DNA of 64,000 nucleotides, taken from positions 124,001 to 188,000 of IMG/VR virus record IMGVR_UViG_3300021137_000001; one strand, 5' to 3'. Made by a program: the position numbers and the translations under genes. Positions within the stretch are counted from its first letter, which is position 1; each line of letters starts with the position of its first letter. The notes under the pieces were generated by a model, which had not been told where the DNA came from, ran no database searches, and worked only from the letters and a program-made list of their open reading frames with translations. Positions 3,707 through 59,150 of the stretch are shown here, piece by piece.

Positions 3707-4448
3707 TTTAATAGCATTATTATTATTCAGCAGTTCTGTATTTGCTGATGTAACTGCTAAAAGTTATCTTGTTACTGATACGCAAGGACAAGTTATTAAT
3801 GAGCGTGATGCCGACCAGCCACGACCCATTGCTAGCATTACTAAACTAATGACTGTTATGGTTGTGCTCGATGCTAAACAACCGTTAGACGAAGATATTA
3901 AATTAAACTTTAAGTTGGCTAAACAATATCATACACATTTACCACGTAGTATCAAAACGCTAACACGTCACGAACTAATAGATTTAGCAATGGTTAAGAG
4001 TGATAACTTCGCCGCTTACACGTTATGTTTAAATTACCCAGGTGGCATAGATAATTGTGTATATGCTATGAACAACAAAGCTGTTACGTTAGGTATGGAC
4101 CATACCACCTACACAGACCCAACAGGGATAGAAGAAACTAATGTAAGTACAGCACGTGATTTAATTAAATTAATTATCTCAGCTAGGAGTTATTTAGAGA
4201 TTGTTGGTGCTACTAGATCTAGTGTAGATATTAAAGTTAAGAAACATTGGTGGCAGTTTTGGAATACTAATTTGTTAGTGCGTAATACAGATGATGTTAT
4301 TGTAAGTAAAACAGGATACATACATCAAAGTGGAGGGTGTGTTGTGATGCTTATGAATACTCAATTTGGACAGCGCATAGTAGCAATACTTGGTAGCAAA
4401 AATACACATACCCGTATTCCAGAAGCGCAAACTTTAGCTAATATTTAA
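3690..4448 (+). CDS. Peptidase S11 D-Ala-D-Ala carboxy/endopeptidase (PBP7-like)
   Basis: Signal peptide; SxxK (ASITK), SDN and KTG motifs. Confidence 0.9.
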   Translation: MLLRNSLIALLLFSSSVFADVTAKSYLVTDTQGQVINERDADQPRPIASITKLMTVMVVLDAKQPLDEDIKLNFKLAKQYHTHLPRSIKTLTRHELIDLAMVKSDNFAAYTLCLNYPGGIDNCVYAMNNKAVTLGMDHTTYTDPTGIEETNVSTARDLIKLIISARSYLEIVGATRSSVDIKVKKHWWQFWNTNLLVRNTDDVIVSKTGYIHQSGGCVVMLMNTQFGQRIVAILGSKNTHTRIPEAQTLANI

Positions 4449-19629: not shown

Positions 19630-20942
19630 TGCTTAAAGATACATTTTGCTCAAGTCCATGGTTTCATATTAGGATAGGGCCATCGGGTAAATTTTTACCT
19701 TGCCGATGGGGGTCGCATGACGATACTGGTTATAATATTGCAACAACATCTATCGCAGAATTTATGAATTCTGATATCATGCAAGGAATTAGAGCCTCTC
19801 TATTAGATGGTGACAAATTACGTATGTGCAGTAGTTGTCATTATGAAGATTCGAACAATAAAGTAAGTGGACGTCAACGCCAACTCTTAAAGAGCGTAAT
19901 TAGTATTACAAATTTTGATAAGACATTTTGTGCAAGCCCACATTATGAAATATTTGAATATAGTGCCACTAATAATGGTCATACTAATAGTTTGCCAATT
20001 GATTTACAAATTGATCTCGGCAATACTTGTAATAGTGGTTGTATTATGTGTACTCCGACTTATAGCAGTAAATTATCTAACGACTATGTTAAACTTAACA
20101 AACTAGAACCGACATTATTTAAATCCTTTTCTAAATTTAAGAATTGGGCAGATGATCCAATATTAATGGATAAGTTTGTAGCAGAATTAATTACTATTCC
20201 TAACATTAAATACATACATTTCTTGGGTGGTGAAACACTTTACTTAAAAAGTTTTTATGATATTTGTGAAAGATTAATAGAAGCAGGAGTTGCGAAGGAT
20301 ATTAATATCGGAACAACAACTAATTGTACTGTGTATTCAGAAGAATTAGAAAACATTATTAAGAATTTTAAGCATGTTCATTTGGGACTTAGTATTGAAT
20401 CTCTACATGAAGTTAATGATTATATTCGTTATCCGAGTACGATTGATTCAGTATCATCGAACATTCAGAAATTTTTGGATCTTAGAAAGCAAACTAATTT
20501 ACATTTAAGTTTGCGTATAACGCCGACTATCTTCAGCATTTATCATTTAGATACATTATTTGAATTTATGATTAATAATTCTATTATTGCAGAAAGTTGT
20601 GATATATTATACGAACCGAGTTGGTTACGAATTGAACTATTGCCACCAAATTTAATTGCTATTGCACTTGAAAAACTTAATGCAGTTATAAATAAATATC
20701 AATTAACCAATAGTAATCAGGTTATTATTAATCGCAGGCGAGATGATTTGATTGACCCAGTTATTACAAGCATACTTTTTGAATATAAACATTTCCTTGA
20801 GAATTACCAAGTACCCAATGATGTGGACGAAGAACGCCACAATTTAGTTAAATTTATTAAAGCATTCGAATCATTGCGCAATAATACAATATTGGATTAT
20901 CTCCCAGAATATGAAGAATTTTTACGACAGTACGGTTATTAA
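19629..20942 (+). CDS. Radical SAM protein with N-terminal twitch/SPASM-like domain
   Basis: CxxPW...PC...CxxC followed by CNSGCIMC and GGETL. Confidence 0.88.
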   Translation: MLKDTFCSSPWFHIRIGPSGKFLPCRWGSHDDTGYNIATTSIAEFMNSDIMQGIRASLLDGDKLRMCSSCHYEDSNNKVSGRQRQLLKSVISITNFDKTFCASPHYEIFEYSATNNGHTNSLPIDLQIDLGNTCNSGCIMCTPTYSSKLSNDYVKLNKLEPTLFKSFSKFKNWADDPILMDKFVAELITIPNIKYIHFLGGETLYLKSFYDICERLIEAGVAKDINIGTTTNCTVYSEELENIIKNFKHVHLGLSIESLHEVNDYIRYPSTIDSVSSNIQKFLDLRKQTNLHLSLRITPTIFSIYHLDTLFEFMINNSIIAESCDILYEPSWLRIELLPPNLIAIALEKLNAVINKYQLTNSNQVIINRRRDDLIDPVITSILFEYKHFLENYQVPNDVDEERHNLVKFIKAFESLRNNTILDYLPEYEEFLRQYGY

Positions 20943-21294
20943 ACCAACCCTAAGATTAGATGTAGTAATTACATTAACTCCTGTCGGTCAGTGTCCATGC
21001 ATTGTATTAATCAATGATGGAGTAATTTATAACAACAAGTTAACTGAACTAACGGTATTACAGCACAGTCATTCATTAATCGATCCATTAAATATATCAA
21101 TAAATGTAACCCGTCAACATCCCGATGCAGTAATAGTCGACATTACTGTAGACGGATTTCCTATCATTCCATTATATCAACATTATGCGCAACCGCCGAC
21201 TGATTACATAGATACCAATGATACTTGGGTATTAACCATTCCGAGTTTTTATCCGTGGTATCATGAAATTACTGGACAAGGTTGGATTGCTTAA
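20911..21294 (+). CDS. Hypothetical protein
   Basis: Overlaps the radical SAM gene; PFYPWYH-type C-terminus. Confidence 0.7.
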   Translation: MKNFYDSTVIKPTLRLDVVITLTPVGQCPCIVLINDGVIYNNKLTELTVLQHSHSLIDPLNISINVTRQHPDAVIVDITVDGFPIIPLYQHYAQPPTDYIDTNDTWVLTIPSFYPWYHEITGQGWIA

Positions 21295-21302
21295 AATAAA
21301 GG

Positions 21303-21331
21303 TTGACATCTGGTTGTTTTGGCTGTATAAT
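21303..21331 (+). promoter_or_regulatory. Sigma70-type early promoter
   Basis: TTGACA-N17-TATAAT. Confidence 0.9.
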
Positions 21332-21388
21332 GCTATACATACACTAACAACACGGAGTAATAAAAAATGAATGCACAACAAATTACAA
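21323..21388 (+). repeat. 66-bp direct repeat, copy 2
   Basis: 65/66 identical to 7123-7188. Confidence 0.95.
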
Positions 21389-21639
21389 CTGCTTTAGTTC
21401 AAGGTACATTTACTAACGAAGAATTACAAAGCGTAATCGAAGCTGTTAAGTATGCTCGCGTTAAGTTAGGTAGAGCAACTAAACGTAGTTTAACTGTAGG
21501 TGATAATGTTTCATTTGTTAGCTCACGTAGCGGGCTAACTGTTAAAGGTACAGTGCTTAAAATTGCAATTAAAAATGTACGTGTTAGCACTGCACAAGGC
21601 ATTTGGAACGTGCCAGCTAATATGTTGGAAGTTGCATAA
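21367..21639 (+). CDS. Small SH3/KOW-like hypothetical early protein
   Basis: VGDNVSF...GTV.K...V.V...W.VPANML. Confidence 0.75.
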   Translation: MNAQQITTALVQGTFTNEELQSVIEAVKYARVKLGRATKRSLTVGDNVSFVSSRSGLTVKGTVLKIAIKNVRVSTAQGIWNVPANMLEVA

Positions 21640-21690
21640 TAACAGTTAACTTGCATTGGAACAATTCAAATGTTACAATGCAGATTTTGG

Positions 21691-21719
21691 TTGACAGTTT
21701 ACCAAAATGGTTATATAAT
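21691..21719 (+). promoter_or_regulatory. Sigma70-type promoter
   Basis: TTGACA-N17-TATAAT. Confidence 0.85.
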
Positions 21720-21756
21720 AGTATTTAGAAGTTAATTAAACGACAGGAGAACTAAA

Positions 21757-21951
21757 ATGCGATTCGAAGTTAGTTATAAAACTTTAGCACGTGGCTTAAA
21801 TGAAGGTGGTAGTATTCAGGGCACCGATGGCCCAAGCAACTATGTTGTTGTAGTTGAAGCGGCAAATCAAAATTATGCAGAAAATCAAGTACGCAATATG
21901 AACGGTGGTGCAAATCGTTGTATCATTCAATACGCACGTCACATTAGTTAA
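21757..21951 (+). CDS. Hypothetical protein
   Basis: AGGAG RBS. Confidence 0.75.
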   Translation: MRFEVSYKTLARGLNEGGSIQGTDGPSNYVVVVEAANQNYAENQVRNMNGGANRCIIQYARHIS

Positions 21952-21962
21952 GGGAAGTAAAA

Positions 21963-22277
21963 ATGGCATACGCAGTAATCACAGTATCGAACGGTATCGA
22001 ACTTAAAAAAGTACCACTAGGATTTTCTTGGACCACGTTCTTTTTTAGTGGTATCCCGGCATTACTTCGTCAGGATTGGTTACCTGGAATTCTTATCATT
22101 GTAGCCAATGTGTTTACGTGGGGCATTGCAGGTATTGTTATGGCATTTATCTATAACAAGATGTATGCAAAGTCACTGTTTGAAAAAGGTTTTACTATTC
22201 AGTCTTTACCACTTGGACAAACTGCTGAATCAGTGAAAAGCTATTTAGGTTATATTAAATTCCCAAACGAAGCATAG
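21963..22277 (+). CDS. Membrane protein (DUF2628-like)
   Basis: GFSWTTFFF..PALLR.DW...YNKMY...KGF. Confidence 0.7.
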   Translation: MAYAVITVSNGIELKKVPLGFSWTTFFFSGIPALLRQDWLPGILIIVANVFTWGIAGIVMAFIYNKMYAKSLFEKGFTIQSLPLGQTAESVKSYLGYIKFPNEA

Positions 22278-22288
22278 GAGAACTAGTA

Positions 22289-22480
22289 ATGGCAAAGAAA
22301 AATAAAGCAATTGTAAATGGTGTTGACAGTTTTAGTGTTAGCATTTTAGACAATGGTTATACATTGGAGTACACTGGTAACAACAGTGACAATGATTGGG
22401 TCACCAATAAAGTTATTGTTGGTGATGTAGATAAACTTTGTGAATTAATCCGCGGCGTGGTTGTACTTCCGCAGGCATAA
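22289..22480 (+). CDS. Hypothetical protein
   Basis: AGGAG RBS. Confidence 0.7.
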   Translation: MAKKNKAIVNGVDSFSVSILDNGYTLEYTGNNSDNDWVTNKVIVGDVDKLCELIRGVVVLPQA

Positions 22481-22489
22481 GGAGAAAGT

Positions 22490-22813
22490 ATGTTTAAGAT
22501 AGTAGGCGTTTCGACGCATGCAGGACAAACAAAAGTACGTTTTGCAAATGACTTTGTAACACGTGTTAAGACATTAGTTAAAGGTGGACACACTAATGTT
22601 AATCTAATTGAAATGGATACATTCTGTTCTAAAGCAGATGCAGTCGCGTATCTTAAGACAACTGACTTAATCAACACTCCGCTATTTGCACAAGCAATTG
22701 CCGAAGCAGATGAGAAGTACAATGGTTCTGGCGCACCAGTTTATCGTGTTACCAAACCCGAGTTAAGTTTAGATGCTATTCGTTCACGTATCAATGTGGA
22801 GAAAACTGCGTAG
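22490..22813 (+). CDS. Hypothetical phage protein
   Basis: AAGGAG RBS; KVRFAND motif. Confidence 0.75.
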   Translation: MFKIVGVSTHAGQTKVRFANDFVTRVKTLVKGGHTNVNLIEMDTFCSKADAVAYLKTTDLINTPLFAQAIAEADEKYNGSGAPVYRVTKPELSLDAIRSRINVEKTA

Positions 22814-22876
22814 TTAACTAAATAGCTATAATGCTGTCCTAAATGCAATCTTAATGACGGCCTTAGGGGAGTCATT

Positions 22877-23299
22877 ATGAAACTTGCTTTAGTAGCATTG
22901 CTCGTATCGCTATCAGTTAGCGCAGAAGAAGTACCAAAAGAAATGTACATGCCAAATGATGCTGGTGGCTTTGTTGTATTAACTACAGAGCCCTGTGCAT
23001 TTGAACAAGTGGCAAAAGAATATGAGTACAGAACTTATGCTACAGAAAGTTCAGATGTAGTAGCACACGAAGGTTGCTGGACTCTGCCAGATGTATCGAA
23101 TGTGCCAACTAAGTTATTTTCAAAGTCAGAAGGCGCACCGGAAGCACCAACAATACGTGTTATTGTTATAGTTAATACTTGGTGGAAAGAGGGCGGTAAG
23201 GCATCATTCTTTCAAACAAACTTTAATAAAGAGAAGAAACGTTATTTAAGTAATGGCACATTTGAACTGACATTGCCACCAATTGTAGTTAAGCCATAA
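22877..23299 (+). CDS. Secreted/periplasmic hypothetical protein
   Basis: Signal peptide; GCW motif. Confidence 0.7.
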   Translation: MKLALVALLVSLSVSAEEVPKEMYMPNDAGGFVVLTTEPCAFEQVAKEYEYRTYATESSDVVAHEGCWTLPDVSNVPTKLFSKSEGAPEAPTIRVIVIVNTWWKEGGKASFFQTNFNKEKKRYLSNGTFELTLPPIVVKP

Positions 23300-23308
23300 G
23301 GAAGTAAA

Positions 23309-23440
23309 ATGAAAAGAAAGAAATTAATAAGAAAAATGTATCTAGCATGTGTGCGTAAGAATACAAAGAAACAAAAGAAACTATGGCTTAAAGCATTAAA
23401 GCTAAGTTTGAAACACAAACACACTGAAGTAATTCAGTAA
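23309..23440 (+). CDS. Small highly basic protein (43 aa) immediately upstream of tmRNA
   Basis: AAGGA RBS; MKRKKLIRKMYLACVRK... Confidence 0.6.
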   Translation: MKRKKLIRKMYLACVRKNTKKQKKLWLKALKLSLKHKHTEVIQ

Positions 23441-23447
23441 AAGAAAT

Positions 23448-23783
23448 TGTTGTATAACTCTCAAAGTAAGGATTGCAAGACGCGGGGGCAGAACCCGCCA
23501 TCTCCACCAAAGATATATTAAGCAATATTGGCAAGAAACGCCATAAGTTCGGTAGTATATCTTTGATGGGGATGACTTAGATTCGATTGCGATAGATAGG
23601 ATAAAGGGCAACACGTGGGGTCACGTTAAATGCAAAAACCGTAAATGCAGAAAAAGCAAATACAACTGGTGCAGTAAAAGTATCTATGGGTCGTGGCTTC
23701 CGCTTCGGTTCACGTACTGATGCTGCTGTTTTAGCTTAGTCTAAAACAACCGGGGTAGGACTTACCTGGCAACAGAAACAACC
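23448..23783 (+). ncRNA. ssrA: Circularly permuted two-piece tmRNA (outer ends approximate)
   Basis: T-arm plus CATCTCCACCA ending 23509; hairpin spacer; GGGGATG 5' end at 23568 (G3-U70 pair); tag ORF 23647-23739; terminator follows. Confidence 0.92.
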
Positions 23784-23808
23784 AAAAAGCCCCGCAAGGG
23801 GCTTTTTT
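23784..23808 (+). terminator. Rho-independent terminator of tmRNA
   Basis: AAAAAGCCCC-GCAA-GGGGCTTTTTT. Confidence 0.9.
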
Positions 23809-23832
23809 ACGACAACGCAAATAAATACTATT

Positions 23833-24234
23833 ATGGGAAGACCAAAACTAATAGAAACAGAAGAAGAACGCAGACTACGATTACGAGCTGCTTATAACCG
23901 ATGGATAGCAAAACCTGGTAATAAGGAAAAGAAATATAAATCGGATAAGAAATATTCAGCAGACGCACATAAGCGTTGGCGTCAAGCAAATAAGCATAAG
24001 ACACGATTAAAAAGTGCCAACGAACGAGCCGCAAGATTACAGAGAATCCCACCGTGGGCAGATAAAGAAGCGGTTAAAGAGTTTTATCTAAGCTGCCCTG
24101 CAGGATATCATGTTGATCATATAATTCCGTTGCGTGGTAAAATAGTAAGCGGACTACATATAGTAGAGAATATGCAATATCTTATAGCTGAAGTAAATTT
24201 AAGTAAAAGTAACAAATATGTGATATCCGCCTAA
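23833..24234 (+). CDS. HNH endonuclease
   Basis: HVDHIIPL.GK.VSGLH..EN.Q.L....N.SKSNK. Confidence 0.9.
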   Translation: MGRPKLIETEEERRLRLRAAYNRWIAKPGNKEKKYKSDKKYSADAHKRWRQANKHKTRLKSANERAARLQRIPPWADKEAVKEFYLSCPAGYHVDHIIPLRGKIVSGLHIVENMQYLIAEVNLSKSNKYVISA

Positions 24235-24310
24235 GAAACTGCTTCGTCCGGGGTAGCTATACCTTGTTACCAAAACTAGTAGAAAGCTCACTTCGGTGGG
24301 CTTTCTTTTT
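24229..24310 (+). repeat. Diverged second copy of the tmRNA 3' end plus terminator
   Basis: CCGGGGTAG....TACCT.G..AC..AAAC matches 23750-23779 and is followed by a TTCG-loop terminator at 24281-24310. Confidence 0.7.
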
Positions 24311-24312
24311 GG

Positions 24313-24341
24313 TTGACATTTTAGTAAATCGAGCGTATAAT
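24313..24341 (+). promoter_or_regulatory. Sigma70-type promoter
   Basis: TTGACA-N17-TATAAT. Confidence 0.88.
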
Positions 24342-24418
24342 AGCTTTATAAGCTAAGAGAACGGCTTATTTTGTAAACAATGTTTACATAATTTTGTACA
24401 TTATACGGAGAAGTAACA

Positions 24419-25408
24419 ATGAGTAAATCTGAAGATTTAAAAATGCAACCTTTTGATCCTAGTCAAGGACGCAAAGACAAGAAAGTGTCTTTGATTCAAG
24501 TTGGACGAATGGTCCAAAAACGAGTCGGCACTATTGCAACAAACCCAAGTTTCCCATACCAAGATATATTAAAGTTTGCATGGGTGCCTGCTGAATTAGT
24601 TTATTTTAATTATGAGCGCCAACGTTGGCCTGAGCCAAAACACCAAAAGAAACTACGTGGTAAGTGGAATATTCATTGCGTAACTCCGCTTCAATGCCGT
24701 TATAGTCCTAGCGAAAATCGTTACTATGGTGCAGATGGTCAACAACACTCCACTGAGTGGATTGCGCAGTATGGAGAGCAAAGCATGGTTCCTGTATTCT
24801 ATGTTGAGAGTGAGGACGAAAATGTAGAATCGATTATGTTATTGGCACTTAATAATGATAATGAGCCGATGGCAAAATATTTTATTCACCAACAAGAAGT
24901 TATCATGGGTGAGAAAGATGCTGTTGCCCTTGAAAATTGTGTTATCGATGCTGGTTGTACTACCGGCTACAAAAAACGTACAGCAGGAGTTATTACTCAC
25001 ATCAGTGATTTAACCATGGCCCGGGATCAGTTTGGGTTAGGTGCGCTAGGACAAATTTTAAGTAAAATGCGTACATATTGGCCGACTGAAAAAATCGCCA
25101 CAGCAACTATGCTAGGCTTCCTTAAAGTTCGTGAACTTATGATATCTGCTGAATTATATACAGATGACTTATTTGAAGATGTTGTATATCAAAATTCAAA
25201 TTTCTTTGAGAGTAGTGATAGACTTCACGGCGACATTAAGGATCAATTTGAATATGAGTACCCAACAAACTACAAGGGTATGGGTGTTCGTGAAAAAATT
25301 GCAAGCGGTATCATTGATGCGTATGAATATAAGACTGGTAAAACATTAGTTGCCAAACCATTTAGCATTACGATGCCAGTAATCGATGATGAACTAAAGG
25401 CGGCATAA
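24419..25408 (+). CDS. ParB/Srx-fold protein (DUF262/DndB/DUF6551-like)
   Basis: YERQR and DGQQH motifs; later LNN. Confidence 0.65.
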   Translation: MSKSEDLKMQPFDPSQGRKDKKVSLIQVGRMVQKRVGTIATNPSFPYQDILKFAWVPAELVYFNYERQRWPEPKHQKKLRGKWNIHCVTPLQCRYSPSENRYYGADGQQHSTEWIAQYGEQSMVPVFYVESEDENVESIMLLALNNDNEPMAKYFIHQQEVIMGEKDAVALENCVIDAGCTTGYKKRTAGVITHISDLTMARDQFGLGALGQILSKMRTYWPTEKIATATMLGFLKVRELMISAELYTDDLFEDVVYQNSNFFESSDRLHGDIKDQFEYEYPTNYKGMGVREKIASGIIDAYEYKTGKTLVAKPFSITMPVIDDELKAA

Positions 25409-25851
25409 TGGCAAAATTATATAATAAATATGACCCCGGCACATATCATAGCCGTACCCTTTATCGTATAGTTTGCAATACCAATGACTTACGTCCTGTT
25501 TGGGCATATAAAAATGCCAACAAATGGGGTGTAGAAAACGAACCGTTTTTAAAACTATGCGGCGAAATGTGCTCGTGTTGTGGAAGTACTTTAAACTATG
25601 GATTAGGTAAAAACAACATAGAAGATAAACTTGATATTAACACTCCTAGCACCGATCATATTGTGTCGCAGGACGAAGCTAAAAAGTTGGGTTGGTCTAA
25701 GGAACAAATACATGACATAAGCAATCTTTGGATTATATGTATGCGATGCAATTTGTTGAAAAATAATTCAACCGCAGAAGATATACATCGTTACAAGGCA
25801 ATTGTGGAAGTATTAGAACGTACTAAATTAAACAGTATATTAATTGAATAA
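25408..25851 (+). CDS. HNH nuclease translationally coupled to the ParB-like gene
   Basis: CSCCG...STDHIV...NLWIICMRCN..K; TAATG overlap. Confidence 0.85.
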   Translation: MAKLYNKYDPGTYHSRTLYRIVCNTNDLRPVWAYKNANKWGVENEPFLKLCGEMCSCCGSTLNYGLGKNNIEDKLDINTPSTDHIVSQDEAKKLGWSKEQIHDISNLWIICMRCNLLKNNSTAEDIHRYKAIVEVLERTKLNSILIE

Positions 25852-25965
25852 AAATAAATCCACAGAAACCCATTGACATAAGTAATTATCTGTAATACAC
25901 TATGTATTTCGTGCCTAACTTAGGGCGGCGTACATAATTCTATTTGCTTAATAAAGGAGTAAGAA

Positions 25966-27856
<1,891 letters not shown>

Positions 27857-58390: not shown

Positions 58391-59150
58391 CTTCGTTCCA
58401 CATTTCTTCAGCAATAATAAATTCACGAACGAATCCACTACGTACAATATCATCGTGTCCAAAGTAAACACTGCGGAACGATGGTATCATTGCAGCAATT
58501 TTCACAAACTTAGCAAAGCCACTGAAGTCACTTCTTTTACGATGTAAATCGTTTTGTGCAATATCACCGCAGTAGATAAGTTTAGAGTGTTGTCCGACAC
58601 GTGTTGCTACTGTAGATAATTCTTCGTAGTTTGCATTTTGAAATTCATCAAAGATAACAATACTATTATCCCATGTTACACCACGAATGTTACCTGTAGT
58701 GTGAAATTCCACAATGCCTGCTTCTTTTAAGAATTTGTATTGATTTGTTTTCTTAAATAAATCGTTAAACAACTGCGTATATGGCAGTTCATAAATTGCA
58801 TTCTTTTCCTCTTGTGTGCCTGGAACAAAACCTTGTTCTCTAGCTTGTACTGCACTACGTACAATAATTATTTTCTCATATCCGTTTACTTTGTCTAGTA
58901 CATCACACAATGAAAGATACAATGCAATAAAACTTTTACCCGAACCTGCAGACCCAGCAAGTATCATGGAGTAGTCATCACTCCACATATCAAAGACTTT
59001 TTCTTGGTTTATTGTTTTTGGGCTAACATTCACTAAATCAAGACTTGAAAACTTCTTTTGATTATAGGCTGTTGGGATTGGTATTGGATTGTTATCGATA
59101 AATCTTACAAATTCACGTGCTTTTACTGAACCGCTTCTACGTTTTGTCAT
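58374..59150 (-). CDS. phoH: PhoH-family ATPase
   Basis: GSAGSGKS, IIIVRS, RGVTWD, DEFQN, TRVG, GD..QND, DIVRS. Confidence 0.93.
   Translation of the reverse strand: MTKRRSGSVKAREFVRFIDNNPIPIPTAYNQKKFSSLDLVNVSPKTINQEKVFDMWSDDYSMILAGSAGSGKSFIALYLSLCDVLDKVNGYEKIIIVRSAVQAREQGFVPGTQEEKNAIYELPYTQLFNDLFKKTNQYKFLKEAGIVEFHTTGNIRGVTWDNSIVIFDEFQNANYEELSTVATRVGQHSKLIYCGDIAQNDLHRKRSDFSGFAKFVKIAAMIPSFRSVYFGHDDIVRSGFVREFIIAEEMWNEANPNG

What the first reader, a model, noticed from the sequence alone, without database searches (positions are those of the whole stretch)
24313..25851. Stand-alone ParB/Srx + HNH operon resembling a split GmrSD-type nuclease
Seen: an early promoter drives a 329-aa protein with (Y)xxQR and DGQQH motifs, TAATG-coupled to a 147-aa HNH (DHIV...NL...CxxCN). 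Known: GmrSD type IV restriction enzymes and SspE pair a DUF262 ParB/Srx NTPase (YQR, DGQQR) with a DUF1524 HNH domain. Inference: a phage-borne, NTP-regulated, possibly modification-dependent nuclease for host DNA degradation or exclusion of competing phages. The R-to-H change suggests a distinct subfamily.
Basis: partly seen in the sequence, partly recalled or inferred. Interest (0 to 1): 0.62.

Follow-up and report, generated by a model that had tools for sequence, protein, structure and literature searches.

The report
Phage two-part ParB-like/HNH nuclease module
A large freshwater phage carries two tightly coupled genes, a ParB/sulfiredoxin-fold nucleotide-binding protein and a zinc HNH nuclease, that always travel together and are one fused protein in other phages; they look like an uncharacterised phage-side counterpart of GmrSD/SspE-type nucleases, but they do not belong to that family.

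Summary
A perfect TTGACA-N17-TATAAT promoter (24313-24341) precedes a 329-aa ORF (24419-25408) with YxxQR and DGQQH motifs. Its stop overlaps (TAATG) the start of a 147-aa HNH ORF (25408-25851).

The 329-aa protein matches no Pfam, NCBIfam, PADLOC or PHROG model. Its fold is ParB/Srx plus a helical domain. Profile-profile comparison (99.9%, E 1e-35) places it beside DUF6551/DGQHR proteins, not DUF262 (GmrS). The partner is a classical zinc HNH (PF01844), not DUF1524 (GmrD), with intact DH...N...N and two CxxC pairs.

The two genes are a unit:
- adjacent in 33 of 33 and 45 of 45 related viral loci, searched from either gene
- co-diverging (Mantel r 0.84)
- under purifying selection
- fused into single 458-520-aa proteins in other phages

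Sporadic mobile HNH genes sit beside or between them, which sets the conserved partner apart from homing endonucleases.

"Split ParB-HNH nuclease" is therefore supported. GmrSD membership is not. NTP control, dependence on DNA modification and the target DNA remain inference. The arginine that SspE needs for GTP hydrolysis is an invariant histidine here.

I rate it a new variant of a known kind, of moderate interest.

The parts
24281..24306 (+). Terminator-like hairpin (11 pairs followed by a T run) that closes the upstream unit just before the module's promoter
   Evidence: Several relatives have an equivalent hairpin upstream of their own promoter.
24313..24341 (+). Sigma-70-type promoter, TTGACA-N17-TATAAT (12 of 12 positions)
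   Evidence: 15 perfect sites in the window against 0.13 expected. Nearly every related lineage has its own TTGAC(A/T)...TATAAT-like site 60-110 nt upstream of the P329 homologue.
24348..24369 (+). Leader stem-loop directly after the -10 box: ATAAGC, a 10-nt loop, GCTTAT. Candidate regulatory or stabilising element.
   Evidence: RNAalifold on 9 clade-1 leaders gives 5 pairs, 4 of them with compensatory changes. A different hairpin lies in the leader of clade 2: 10 pairs, 5 compensatory. The samples are small.
24372..24388 (.). Perfect palindrome TGTAAACA-A-TGTTTACA in the 77-nt leader; candidate operator
   Evidence: It is the only copy in the 329-kb genome. No function was tested.
24406..24409 (+). 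GGAG ribosome-binding site, 9 nt before the ATG of P329
   Evidence: Read from the sequence
24419..25408 (+). P329: ParB/Srx-fold domain (about residues 52-146) plus a helical domain (about 150-320). A divergent DUF6551/DGQHR-type protein with Q68-R69, D106-G-Q-Q-H110 and E137...N145.
   Evidence: - AF2 model: pLDDT 91.
- Foldseek: top hits are all ParB/Noc/KorB/Srx.
- VIA-align: PadC Z 7.3, KorB Z 6.9, Srx Z 6.1.
- ESM Atlas: TM 0.67/0.80 to a 100% DUF6551 cluster.
- hhalign against DUF6551-rich relatives: 99.9%, E 1e-35.
- 306 unnamed relatives.
25408..25851 (+). HNH147: zinc HNH (beta-beta-alpha-Me) nuclease subunit with a family-specific N-terminal region of about 50 residues (T12, Y13, W32). 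Its start is translationally coupled to the P329 stop (TAATG).
   Evidence: - Pfam HNH at E 0.013 for this copy, which has an insertion.
- 22 of 22 family members match PF01844, best E 1.7e-10.
- Invariant D83, H84, N106, N115, C55, C58, C111, C114.
- The C-terminal part of the fused model matches Gme HNH (4h9d), McrA and Cas9 HNH domains.

Best explanation
The two genes encode the two halves of one enzyme.

- P329 is a ParB/sulfiredoxin-fold protein of the DGQHR/DUF6551 branch. I take it to be the nucleotide-binding, DNA-engaging regulatory subunit.
- HNH147 is its dedicated zinc HNH catalytic subunit, docked through a family-specific N-terminal region.
- They are transcribed together from their own sigma-70-type promoter through a structured leader, and are translationally coupled.

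By analogy with GmrSD/BrxU and SspE, the ParB-like subunit would bind an NTP and DNA and thereby license the HNH to nick or cut DNA during infection. The target I consider most likely is non-self DNA: the host chromosome or a co-infecting element.

Shown here: the folds, the family placement, intact catalytic residues, obligate co-occurrence, the fusions, co-divergence and purifying selection.

Inferred: physical complex formation (well grounded), nuclease activity (likely), NTP control (plausible, but weakened by the Arg-to-His change) and the target DNA (a guess).
For: Fold and family of P329:
- ParB/Srx fold.
- Whole-protein match to viral 'ParB/Sulfiredoxin' clusters and a DUF6551 'DGQHR domain' cluster.
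- A profile search of 1.8 billion proteins finds 264 relatives. The distant ones mostly carry DGQHR, and 51 of 63 sampled are Pfam DUF6551.
- hhalign 99.9%, E 1e-35 over columns 51-306.

HNH147:
- 22 of 22 family members match PF01844, and the catalytic and zinc residues are invariant.

The pair as a unit:
- An HNH147 homologue lies directly downstream in 33 of 33 loci that have enough DNA.
- Searching from the HNH side, 45 of 45 full-length hits have a P329-type ORF directly upstream, including very divergent partners.
- No other neighbour is found in more than 8 of 33 lineages.
- Single-chain fusions exist in L012/L013 and in eight 50%-identity clusters of 458-520 aa.
- The fused model has pLDDT 94.7 and pTM 0.88.
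- Mantel r 0.84, 0 of 5000 permutations.
- dN/dS is 0.06-0.14 wherever dS could be computed.

Predicted complex: 'weak support'.
- Score 0.59 against a best control of 0.00.
- The mark was reached by 58 of 80 solved complexes and 2 of 110 mismatched pairs. At 0.60 or under it was reached by only 7 of those 80 and by both passing mismatches.
- The runs share at least 96% of contacts, and the partner's pLDDT is at least 87.

Expression signals: own promoter and structured leader.

Precedents from the literature:
- DGQHR/COG1479 ParB-like domains are often fused to HNH nucleases (PMC3632139).
- GmrSD motif roles (PMC4619093).
- The SspE GTP switch (PMC13251355).
- Phage DUF6551 fusions bind CTP or ATP, and ParB-HNH fusions have been noted (PMC12704722).
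Against: - No biochemical or expression data exist. No RNA run holds the region.
- The Arg of DG-Q-x-R, which is essential for GTP hydrolysis in SspE, is an invariant His here. NTP hydrolysis, and even NTP binding, are unproven.
- P329 itself matches no curated family model.
- No known DNA-modification gene (TGT/DpdA, C5, N6/N4 or Dam methylases) was found that could protect the phage's own DNA. How self-cleavage would be avoided is therefore unexplained.
- Three of nine fused relatives have degenerate HNH catalytic or zinc residues, so nuclease activity is not universal in the wider family.
- One 209-kb relative, 60% complete, lacks the module where synteny would place it.
Confidence: 0.6

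Rival explanations
1. The module works on the phage's own DNA. Possible roles are site- or structure-specific nicking, debranching of replication or recombination intermediates, or generation of the direct terminal repeats. The ParB-like subunit would load at a specific site.
For: - Both genes are under strong purifying selection, single-copy, and retained across 33 lineages of a large-phage clade that shares one terminase type.
- Recurrent neighbours are DNA-metabolism genes: ATP-dependent DNA ligase directly downstream in several lineages, and a RecA-like protein.
- The best PHROG match of HNH147 is labelled 'endonuclease VII'.
- The genome has direct terminal repeats.
- No self-protecting DNA modification genes were found. 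That fits a specific enzyme better than a promiscuous one.
Against: - The terminase lies 128 kb away.
- Pfam Endonuclease_7 matches only 1 of 22 members, at E 0.49.
- phrog_1035 also matches the obviously mobile HNH genes, so its label is not specific.
- One related 209-kb contig lacks the module.
- No repeated candidate loading site was found. The leader palindrome is unique in the genome.
Confidence: 0.25
2. P329 is mainly a DNA-binding switch or regulator, a KorB/DndB/VirB-like NTP-dependent clamp or repressor. The HNH part would serve as a DNA-binding or structural partner, and cleavage would not be the point.
For: - DndB, a DGQHR protein, is a transcriptional regulator, and KorB is a CTP-dependent repressor (PMC4507180 title and abstract; structure hits).
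- The leader holds a unique palindrome and a conserved hairpin that could be operators.
- Three of nine fused relatives have lost HNH catalytic or zinc residues.
- DUF6551 proteins of temperate phages sit first in the early operon, right after the cro-like repressor.
Against: - In the window's own family every HNH catalytic and zinc residue is invariant over 22 sequences down to 28% identity. That argues for an active nuclease.
- No helix-turn-helix or other DNA-binding Pfam domain was detected.
Confidence: 0.1
3. It is a true GmrSD/SspE-family type IV (modification-dependent) restriction enzyme, split into two genes and carried by a phage.
For: - Same domain logic: a ParB/Srx domain with QR / DGQQx / xxxxN motifs, helical domains, and a His-Me nuclease. 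GmrSD also occurs split or fused (PMC4619093).
- 14 of 63 distant relatives also match GmrSD_N weakly.
Against: - PF03235 gives no hit on the genome, whereas 9 of 14 control genomes do give hits.
- BrxU aligns only at Z 3.8-4.3 with rmsd 7.8-9.3 A.
- The nearest family is DUF6551.
- The nuclease is PF01844 with a (CxxC)2 zinc site. GmrSD_C matches 1 of 22 members at E 0.12.
- The motif arginine is histidine.
- PADLOC gives no hit.
Confidence: 0.04
4. HNH147 is a free-standing homing endonuclease that merely happens to lie next to an unrelated ParB-like gene.
For: - The genome has 13 HNH-like spots.
- Mobile HNH genes do lie beside the module: window 23833-24234, and HNH_5 genes upstream in 5 lineages.
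- Mobile HNH genes also lie between the two genes in L015 and L017.
Against: - Adjacency is strict in both search directions: 33 of 33 and 45 of 45.
- Fusions exist.
- The genes co-diverge.
- Stop and start overlap in many lineages.
- HNH147 has a conserved non-HNH N-terminal region.
- It has no paralogue in the genome.
Confidence: 0.01

Closest known systems
GmrSD / BrxU / SspE (DUF262 ParB-like NTPase + DUF1524 His-Me nuclease; type IV or PT-sensing restriction)
   Same: - Same two superfamilies in the same order: a ParB/Srx domain with QR, DGQ-x-x and xxxxN motifs, then helical domains, then a beta-beta-alpha-Me nuclease.
- Both exist split and fused.
- The two halves co-evolve (PMC4619093).
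   Different: - The families differ: DUF6551-like instead of DUF262, and PF01844 zinc HNH instead of DUF1524.
- The motif Arg is His.
- It is encoded by large lytic-type phages rather than bacterial defence islands.
- Structural similarity to BrxU is weak (Z about 4).
- Substrate and NTP dependence are unknown.
DUF6551 (PF20188) / DGQHR-domain proteins of phages, e.g. Staphylococcus phage EW ORF017 and Mycobacterium phage Ramsey gp49 ('ParB-like partition protein')
   Same: - Closest detectable family by profile (99.9%), by predicted structure (TM 0.67/0.80 over residues 52-314) and by language-model features.
- Phage-encoded and promoter-proximal.
- Phage DUF6551 fusions bind CTP or ATP in vitro (PMC12704722).
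   Different: - The window protein does not reach the Pfam threshold; 1 of 25 relatives matches, at E 0.11.
- It has an extra N-terminal region of about 50 residues with a PFDPSxG motif.
- DGQQH replaces DGQHR.
- It has an obligate HNH partner. The temperate-phage DUF6551 genes pair with a second ParB-like protein and have no HNH.
DndB (PF14072, DGQHR domain), regulator of phosphorothioate modification
   Same: ParB/Srx fold and the QR / DGQHR / FxxxN motif set. 7 of 63 distant relatives also match DndB. 9jfl_B appears among the Foldseek hits.
   Different: DndB is a transcriptional regulator fused to other domains and is not coupled to an HNH. The Foldseek probability for 9jfl_B is only 0.15-0.18.
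Bacterial ParB-CTPase-fold proteins fused to HNH (noted in the 2025 PNAS survey, PMC12704722)
   Same: A ParB-fold plus HNH combination recognised as a recurrent but uncharacterised architecture.
   Different: That survey reports ParB-HNH fusions as a mainly bacterial combination defined through PF02195. This family is viral, escapes PF02195, PF03235 and PF20188, and is mostly split. No relation to those fusions was tested.
Canonical ParB / Noc / KorB CTP-dependent DNA clamps
   Same: Best solved-structure matches for the N-terminal domain: pNOB8 ParB-N Z 8.4, PadC Z 7.3-7.8, KorB Z 6.9-7.7.
   Different: No helix-turn-helix domain, no C-terminal dimerisation domain, no ParA partner, no GERRxR box, and a nuclease partner instead.

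Membership tests
GmrSD/SspE (DUF262 + DUF1524) | N-terminal domain matches PF03235 (DUF262/GmrSD_N) | tested here: not met
   No hit for P329 at E up to 1-5. A six-frame search of the whole genome finds nothing at E up to 10, while 9 of 14 control genomes give hits.
GmrSD/SspE (DUF262 + DUF1524) | Near-invariant (I/V)DGQQR motif whose Arg is needed for NTP hydrolysis | tested here: not met
   The motif is A/S-D-G-Q-Q-H with invariant H110. Arg is essential in SspE (PMC13251355).
GmrSD/SspE (DUF262 + DUF1524) | C-terminal nuclease of the DUF1524 (PF07510) His-Me type | tested here: not met
   22 of 22 members match PF01844 HNH. PF07510 matches 1 of 22 at E 0.12. A (CxxC)2 zinc site is present.
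GmrSD/SspE (DUF262 + DUF1524) | ParB/Srx fold of the N-terminal domain plus QR and FxxxN motifs | tested here: met
   Fold. Q68-R69 is invariant. L141-x-x-x-N145 aligns with FxxxN.
GmrSD/SspE (DUF262 + DUF1524) | NTP-dependent cleavage of modified (or PT-flagged) DNA | not testable with these tools
   Needs biochemistry
DUF6551 (PF20188) / DGQHR-domain ParB-like proteins | Match to the PF20188 model above its cut-off | tested here: not met
   The window protein has no hit. 1 of 25 relatives matches, at E 0.11. A six-frame genome search finds nothing, but the control genomes gave no hits either, so that search is uninformative.
DUF6551 (PF20188) / DGQHR-domain ParB-like proteins | Homology detectable by profile and by structure over the whole domain | tested here: met
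   - hhalign 99.9%, E 1e-35, 242 columns, against relatives of which 51 of 63 are PF20188.
- Atlas TM 0.67/0.80 to a 100% DUF6551 cluster.
- Caveat: the comparison set was drawn from hits of the query profile.
DUF6551 (PF20188) / DGQHR-domain ParB-like proteins | DGQHR pentapeptide | tested here: not met
   DGQQH in the window family, and DGQ(Q/H)H in most fused relatives
HNH endonuclease (PF01844, His-Me finger) | Pfam match, the D/H...N...N catalytic set, and (CxxC)2 zinc ligands | tested here: met
   The window copy scores 16.1 bits, below the 21.4 cut-off, because of an insertion. 22 of 22 family members match, best E 1.7e-10. The residues are invariant. Structural matches are to 4h9d, McrA and Cas9 HNH.
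Homing (mobile) HNH endonuclease | Sporadic presence, independent of the neighbouring gene | tested here: not met
   Strict adjacency, fusions and co-divergence. By contrast, mobile HNH genes are inserted sporadically nearby.
Canonical ParB partition protein | HTH DNA-binding domain, C-terminal dimerisation domain, ParA partner, parS sites | tested here: not met
   There are no such Pfam domains, and no conserved neighbour other than the HNH. parS was not searched for systematically.
Terminase-associated HNH (cos-cleavage helper) | Encoded next to the terminase genes | tested here: not met
   The terminase is at genome position 20.7 kb and the module at 148.4 kb. In two relatives they are 60-113 kb apart.

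The most novel reading that the evidence does not exclude
A widespread family of nucleotide-gated nucleases encoded on the phage side. The gate would be a histidine-variant ParB/Srx switch (DGQQH) that may sense an NTP rather than hydrolyse it. It would license a dedicated zinc HNH to destroy non-self DNA, either the host chromosome or rival mobile elements, early in infection by large environmental phages. The structured leader of the operon may provide autoregulation. In effect this would be a phage-borne mirror image of GmrSD/SspE restriction, with an unknown means of telling self from non-self.
Probability: 0.25. Interest if true: 0.75.

Novelty: new variant of a known kind. Interest (0 to 1): 0.55.

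Why it matters
ParB/Srx-fold NTP switches coupled to His-Me nucleases are known as bacterial defence enzymes (GmrSD, BrxU, SspE). Here the same design logic appears in a separate, unannotated family that seems confined to viral and metagenomic sequence. At least 33 lineages of large freshwater and marine phages carry it, in both split and fused forms.

If the enzyme is active, it would show that phages use this switch-plus-nuclease design for their own purposes. It would give the many 'hypothetical' ParB-like proteins of large phages, relatives of DUF6551, a function that can be tested. The natural Arg-to-His variant also offers a way to dissect what the signature motif does.

In practical terms, the family could be given a profile model so that both genes stop being annotated as a hypothetical protein and a 'homing' HNH.

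Tried and rejected
- **Family scans of P329.** Pfam, PHROGs, NCBIfam and PADLOC gave only sub-threshold noise such as BshC and GBP_PSP.
- **PDB sequence searches.** The single sequence and the profile found nothing meaningful.
- **Cultured phages.** Megablast of the region found no match. tblastn of P329 found one weak hit, Sinorhizobium phage Phosso (23% identity), whose downstream gene is not of the HNH147 type. tblastn of HNH147 found only HNH-core matches to actinophage HNH genes.
- **Bacterial and archaeal genomes.** A pattern scan of 185,579 species genomes with the P329 alignment confirmed no relative, but the patterns were narrow. A second scan with the fused-form alignment could not be built.
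- **Core or accessory status.** Twelve terminase-bearing fragments of the same clade lacked the module, but only one (209 kb, 60% complete) was long enough to be informative. The result is inconclusive.
- **Self-protecting DNA modification.** No TGT/DpdA, C5, N6/N4 or Dam methylase was found. ThyA is present. There is no strong avoidance of 4-mer palindromes. This neither supports nor excludes a modification-based self/non-self scheme.
- **Extra domains.** Pfam found none in the longer divergent partners and relatives.
- **Expression.** 20 DNA runs, from at least 16 studies of freshwater metagenomes, hold the stretch. No RNA run does.
- **tRNA and tmRNA.** ARAGORN found none at 20000-26000, although Rfam did (see noticed in passing).
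- **Rejected readings.** Homing endonuclease, terminase helper, canonical partition ParB and bona fide GmrSD membership were considered and rejected; see the membership tests.
Full report
**Context.** The window is bases 124001-188000 of a 329,321-bp IMG/VR virus record with direct terminal repeats, judged 100% complete. Its GC content is 37.4%. The phage recurs in freshwater metagenomes: 20 DNA runs from at least 16 studies hold the stretch, and no RNA run does. Neighbouring genes include GroES/GroEL directly downstream, tail-fibre-like proteins, an ATP-dependent DNA ligase, a ClpP-like or prohead protease and a radical-SAM protein.

**Observation.**
- The 329-aa ORF (24419-25408, here P329) contains N-Y-E-R-Q-R at residues 64-69 and D-G-Q-Q-H at 106-110.
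- Its TAA stop overlaps the ATG of a 147-aa ORF (25408-25851, here HNH147).
- HNH147 carries T-D-H-I-V, S-N-L and C-M-R-C-N.
- TTGACA-N17-TATAAT at 24313-24341 matches the sigma-70 consensus at 12 of 12 positions. It sits just after a terminator-like hairpin at 24281-24306.
- Perfect sites of this kind form a real class in this phage. There are 15 in the window against 0.13 expected, all on the + strand, and 31 in the genome.
- 'Early' timing is inferred from the promoter type only.

**What P329 is.**
- No curated model matches it: Pfam, PHROGs, NCBIfam and PADLOC. PDB sequence searches also find nothing.
- The word-index search found 306 unnamed metagenomic relatives.
- An AlphaFold2 model built from 31 sequences is confident (pLDDT 91.2).
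- All leading Foldseek hits are ParB/Noc/KorB/sulfiredoxin proteins (E about 1e-2, probability up to 0.98).
- VIA-align places residues 52-146 on the ParB/Srx fold: PadC Z 7.3 (rmsd 2.4 A over 89 residues), KorB Z 6.9, sulfiredoxin Z 6.1. BrxU, the solved GmrSD-family enzyme, reaches only Z 4.3 with rmsd 9.3 A.
- In the ESM Atlas, the whole protein resembles viral 'ParB/Sulfiredoxin' clusters (TM 0.73-0.76). It also resembles a 'DGQHR domain' cluster whose members are all PF20188 DUF6551 (TM 0.67 by query and 0.80 by target, residues 52-314).
- A profile search of 1.8 billion representatives gave 264 hits. The distant ones, 250-300 aa long, mostly carry DGQHR. Of 63 sampled, 51 match DUF6551, 14 match GmrSD_N and 7 match DndB.
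- Profile-profile comparison of the P329 family with that set gives 99.9% probability and E 1e-35 over 242 columns. It aligns QR with QR, DGQQH with DGQHR, and E...LxxLN with EAxxFxxxN. The set was drawn from hits of the query profile, so the comparison is not independent. Those hits were, however, significant against the whole library.
- PF03235 (GmrSD_N) finds nothing in the genome, although 9 of 14 control genomes give hits.

P329 is therefore a divergent branch of the DGQHR/DUF6551 group of ParB/Srx proteins. It is a sister of DUF262, not a member. H110 is invariant in the family.

**What HNH147 is.**
- This copy scores just below the Pfam HNH threshold (16.1 bits against 21.4), because it has an insertion between the DH and N motifs.
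- All 22 aligned family members match PF01844 (best E 1.7e-10). GmrSD_C matches one member at E 0.12 and Endonuclease_7 one at E 0.49.
- D83, H84, N106 and N115 are invariant, as are the two CxxC pairs (C55/C58 and C111/C114). So are T12, Y13 and W32, in an N-terminal region of about 50 residues that generic HNH proteins lack.
- In the model of the natural fusion, the C-terminal part matches the Gme HNH nickase (4h9d), McrA and Cas9 HNH domains.

**The two genes are one unit.**
- Of 37 viral loci found with P329 (44-100% identity), all 33 with enough downstream DNA have an HNH147 homologue next in line. The other window genes are not conserved there.
- Starting from HNH147, all 45 loci with a full-length match have a P329-type ORF directly upstream. 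This includes very divergent partners of 445-485 aa. Only five matches limited to the HNH core lack one.
- Across 33 lineages defined at 85% identity, the next commonest neighbour family occurs in only 8. Those neighbours are ClpP, mobile HNH_5 genes, SAM methyltransferases, a RecA-like protein, DNA ligase, an aminotransferase and AlgH.
- The stop and start codons overlap or abut in many lineages.
- In L012 and L013 the two genes form one 462-aa ORF. Eight further 50%-identity clusters of 458-520 aa are equivalent fusions, all metagenomic and unnamed. One sits among phage replication genes.
- The fused protein folds as one confident body (pLDDT 94.7, pTM 0.88).
- Pairwise identities of the two proteins co-vary (Mantel r 0.84, 0 of 5000 permutations). 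Any two vertically inherited genes would show this, but a mobile one would not.
- Both genes are under purifying selection. dN is 0.12-0.31 with saturated dS, and omega is 0.06-0.14 where it could be computed.
- The complex predictor returned 'weak support':
  - The score was 0.59 against a best control of 0.00.
  - The mark was reached by 58 of 80 solved complexes and 2 of 110 mismatches. At 0.60 or under it was reached by only 7 of the 80 and by both passing mismatches.
  - The runs share at least 96% of contacts, and the partner's pLDDT is at least 87.
  - Given the fusions, the prior for binding was already high.
- By contrast, clearly mobile HNH genes occur sporadically. There is a 133-aa one just upstream in the window. 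HNH_5 genes lie upstream in five lineages. Insertions lie between the two genes in L015 and L017. The genome has 13 HNH-like spots.

**Mechanism.** I read the pair as a two-subunit ParB-like/HNH endonuclease or nickase, with the fused proteins as its single-chain form.

The established relatives give the logic:
- In GmrSD, the DGQQR domain is the NTPase and the His-Me domain cuts (PMC4619093).
- In SspE, GTP hydrolysis by the DGQQR domain is an allosteric switch for the nickase, and mutating the motif arginine abolishes hydrolysis (PMC13251355).
- DGQHR/COG1479 domains are often fused to HNH and other nucleases (PMC3632139).
- Phage DUF6551 fusions bind CTP or ATP, and ParB-HNH fusions have been noted but not studied (PMC12704722).

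Status of each step:
- Shown here: the folds, intact active-site residues and the obligate partnership.
- Inferred: NTP control. The invariant histidine in place of the arginine means hydrolysis may be lost or altered.
- A guess: the target DNA. I favour non-self DNA because this is what the architecture does elsewhere.

Points that keep a self-DNA-processing role alive:
- No known self-protecting modification gene was found.
- DNA ligase and a RecA-like protein recur as neighbours.
- Purifying selection is strong.

A mainly regulatory role is a minor rival. It rests on degenerate HNH sites in three of nine fused relatives and on the structured leader. The terminase is 128 kb away, which argues against a packaging-helper HNH.

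**Distribution.**
- Records that carry the module share the window's terminase type at 68-74% identity. This is one broad clade of large phages with hundreds of contigs.
- One 209-kb relative, 60% complete, lacks the module where synteny would place it. Universality is therefore unproven.
- No cultured phage in the collection has the pair.
- No bacterial or archaeal representative genome matched the narrow patterns used.
- DUF6551 proteins of temperate staphylococcal and mycobacterial phages sit right after the cro-like repressor. They are paired with another ParB-like protein and have no HNH.

**Regulatory leader (side result).**
- Most perfect promoters in the genome have leaders of about 25-35 nt. 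This one has a 77-nt leader.
- The leader contains a stem-loop at 24348-24369 and a palindrome at 24372-24388 that is unique in the genome.
- Related lineages keep their own promoter and a leader hairpin with compensatory changes. In one clade 4 of 5 pairs show them, and in another clade, around a different hairpin, 5 of 10 pairs do.
- The samples are small, so this is a lead, not a finding.

**Verdict.**
- The interpretation as a split ParB/Srx-HNH nuclease is supported.
- Membership of GmrSD is not supported.
- The functional claims are untested.
- I classify it as a new variant of a known kind, with interest 0.55.

No step needed referral.

Noticed in passing
window 23404-23786 (+): A phage-encoded two-piece (circularly permuted) tmRNA. 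Rfam tmRNA_permuted scores 91.6 bits (cut-off 47) at 23448-23679, and alpha_tmRNA scores 71.4 bits (cut-off 50) at 23404-23786. ARAGORN missed it. It lies about 500 bp upstream of the module and may hint at a host with permuted tmRNA, such as an alphaproteobacterium.
   Followed up: partly
window 24070-24306 (+): A weak beta_tmRNA match (27.3 bits, far below the cut-off of 84) overlaps the end of the 133-aa HNH ORF and the terminator hairpin. It is probably spurious.
   Followed up: no
window 23833-24234 (+): A free-standing 133-aa HNH-like ORF (phrog_26577 at E 1.6e-14, phrog_1035 at E 2e-10) lies between the tmRNA and the module. It is conserved only in near-identical contigs, so it is likely a mobile homing endonuclease. 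Other lineages carry a different mobile HNH_5 gene at the same place.
   Followed up: partly
window 24342-24418; A7 and A8 alignments: The 77-nt leader is unusually long. It holds a stem-loop (24348-24369) that shows compensatory changes in relatives, and a palindrome TGTAAACA-A-TGTTTACA (24372-24388) that is unique in the genome. A second clade has a different covarying leader hairpin. This may be an autoregulatory operator or an mRNA stabiliser.
   Followed up: partly
whole genome; window sites listed: The genome has 31 perfect TTGACA-N16-18-TATAAT promoters, 30 of them on the + strand. Many have TG before the -10 box and a shared short leader (GCTATACATACACTAACAAC...GGAG). This is a strongly stereotyped promoter-leader class.
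   Followed up: partly
L015:5002-5487, L017:3748-4443, L009:4993-5562, L019:5005-5574: In four relatives an extra ORF is inserted between the two module genes. Two are mobile HNH endonucleases (phrog_3322 / phrog_1035). The other two are 189-aa proteins that match no family.
   Followed up: partly
genome 19218-22817 (L043); window about 58575-58961 (-): The large terminase appears as two adjacent ORFs of 305 and 343 aa. A second, weaker Terminase_6N-like match lies at window about 58.6-59.0 kb on the minus strand.
   Followed up: no
L012: about 90-135 nt upstream of its P329 start at 4001: A tRNA-like or tmRNA-like 3' end (a GGTTCGAATCC T-arm followed by ...CCA) ends right before the module's promoter in L012. 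The tmRNA-module neighbourhood may therefore be shared between lineages.
   Followed up: no
P329 residues 11-17 (window 24449-24469): A conserved N-terminal P-F-D-P-S-x-G peptide precedes the ParB/Srx domain. It is absent from ordinary DUF6551 proteins and only loosely kept in fused relatives. It may be a docking motif.
   Followed up: no
L041 (Staphylococcus phage EW), L042 (Mycobacterium phage Ramsey): Ordinary DUF6551 proteins of temperate phages are the second gene of a conserved pair with another ParB-like protein of about 300 aa. The pair lies immediately after the cro-like repressor. This is an uncharacterised early module in its own right.
   Followed up: partly
window 25873-25901 and 25966-27856: GroES and GroEL genes follow the module with their own promoter-like site (10 of 12 positions). 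No terminator was predicted between HNH147 and GroES, so read-through is possible.
   Followed up: no
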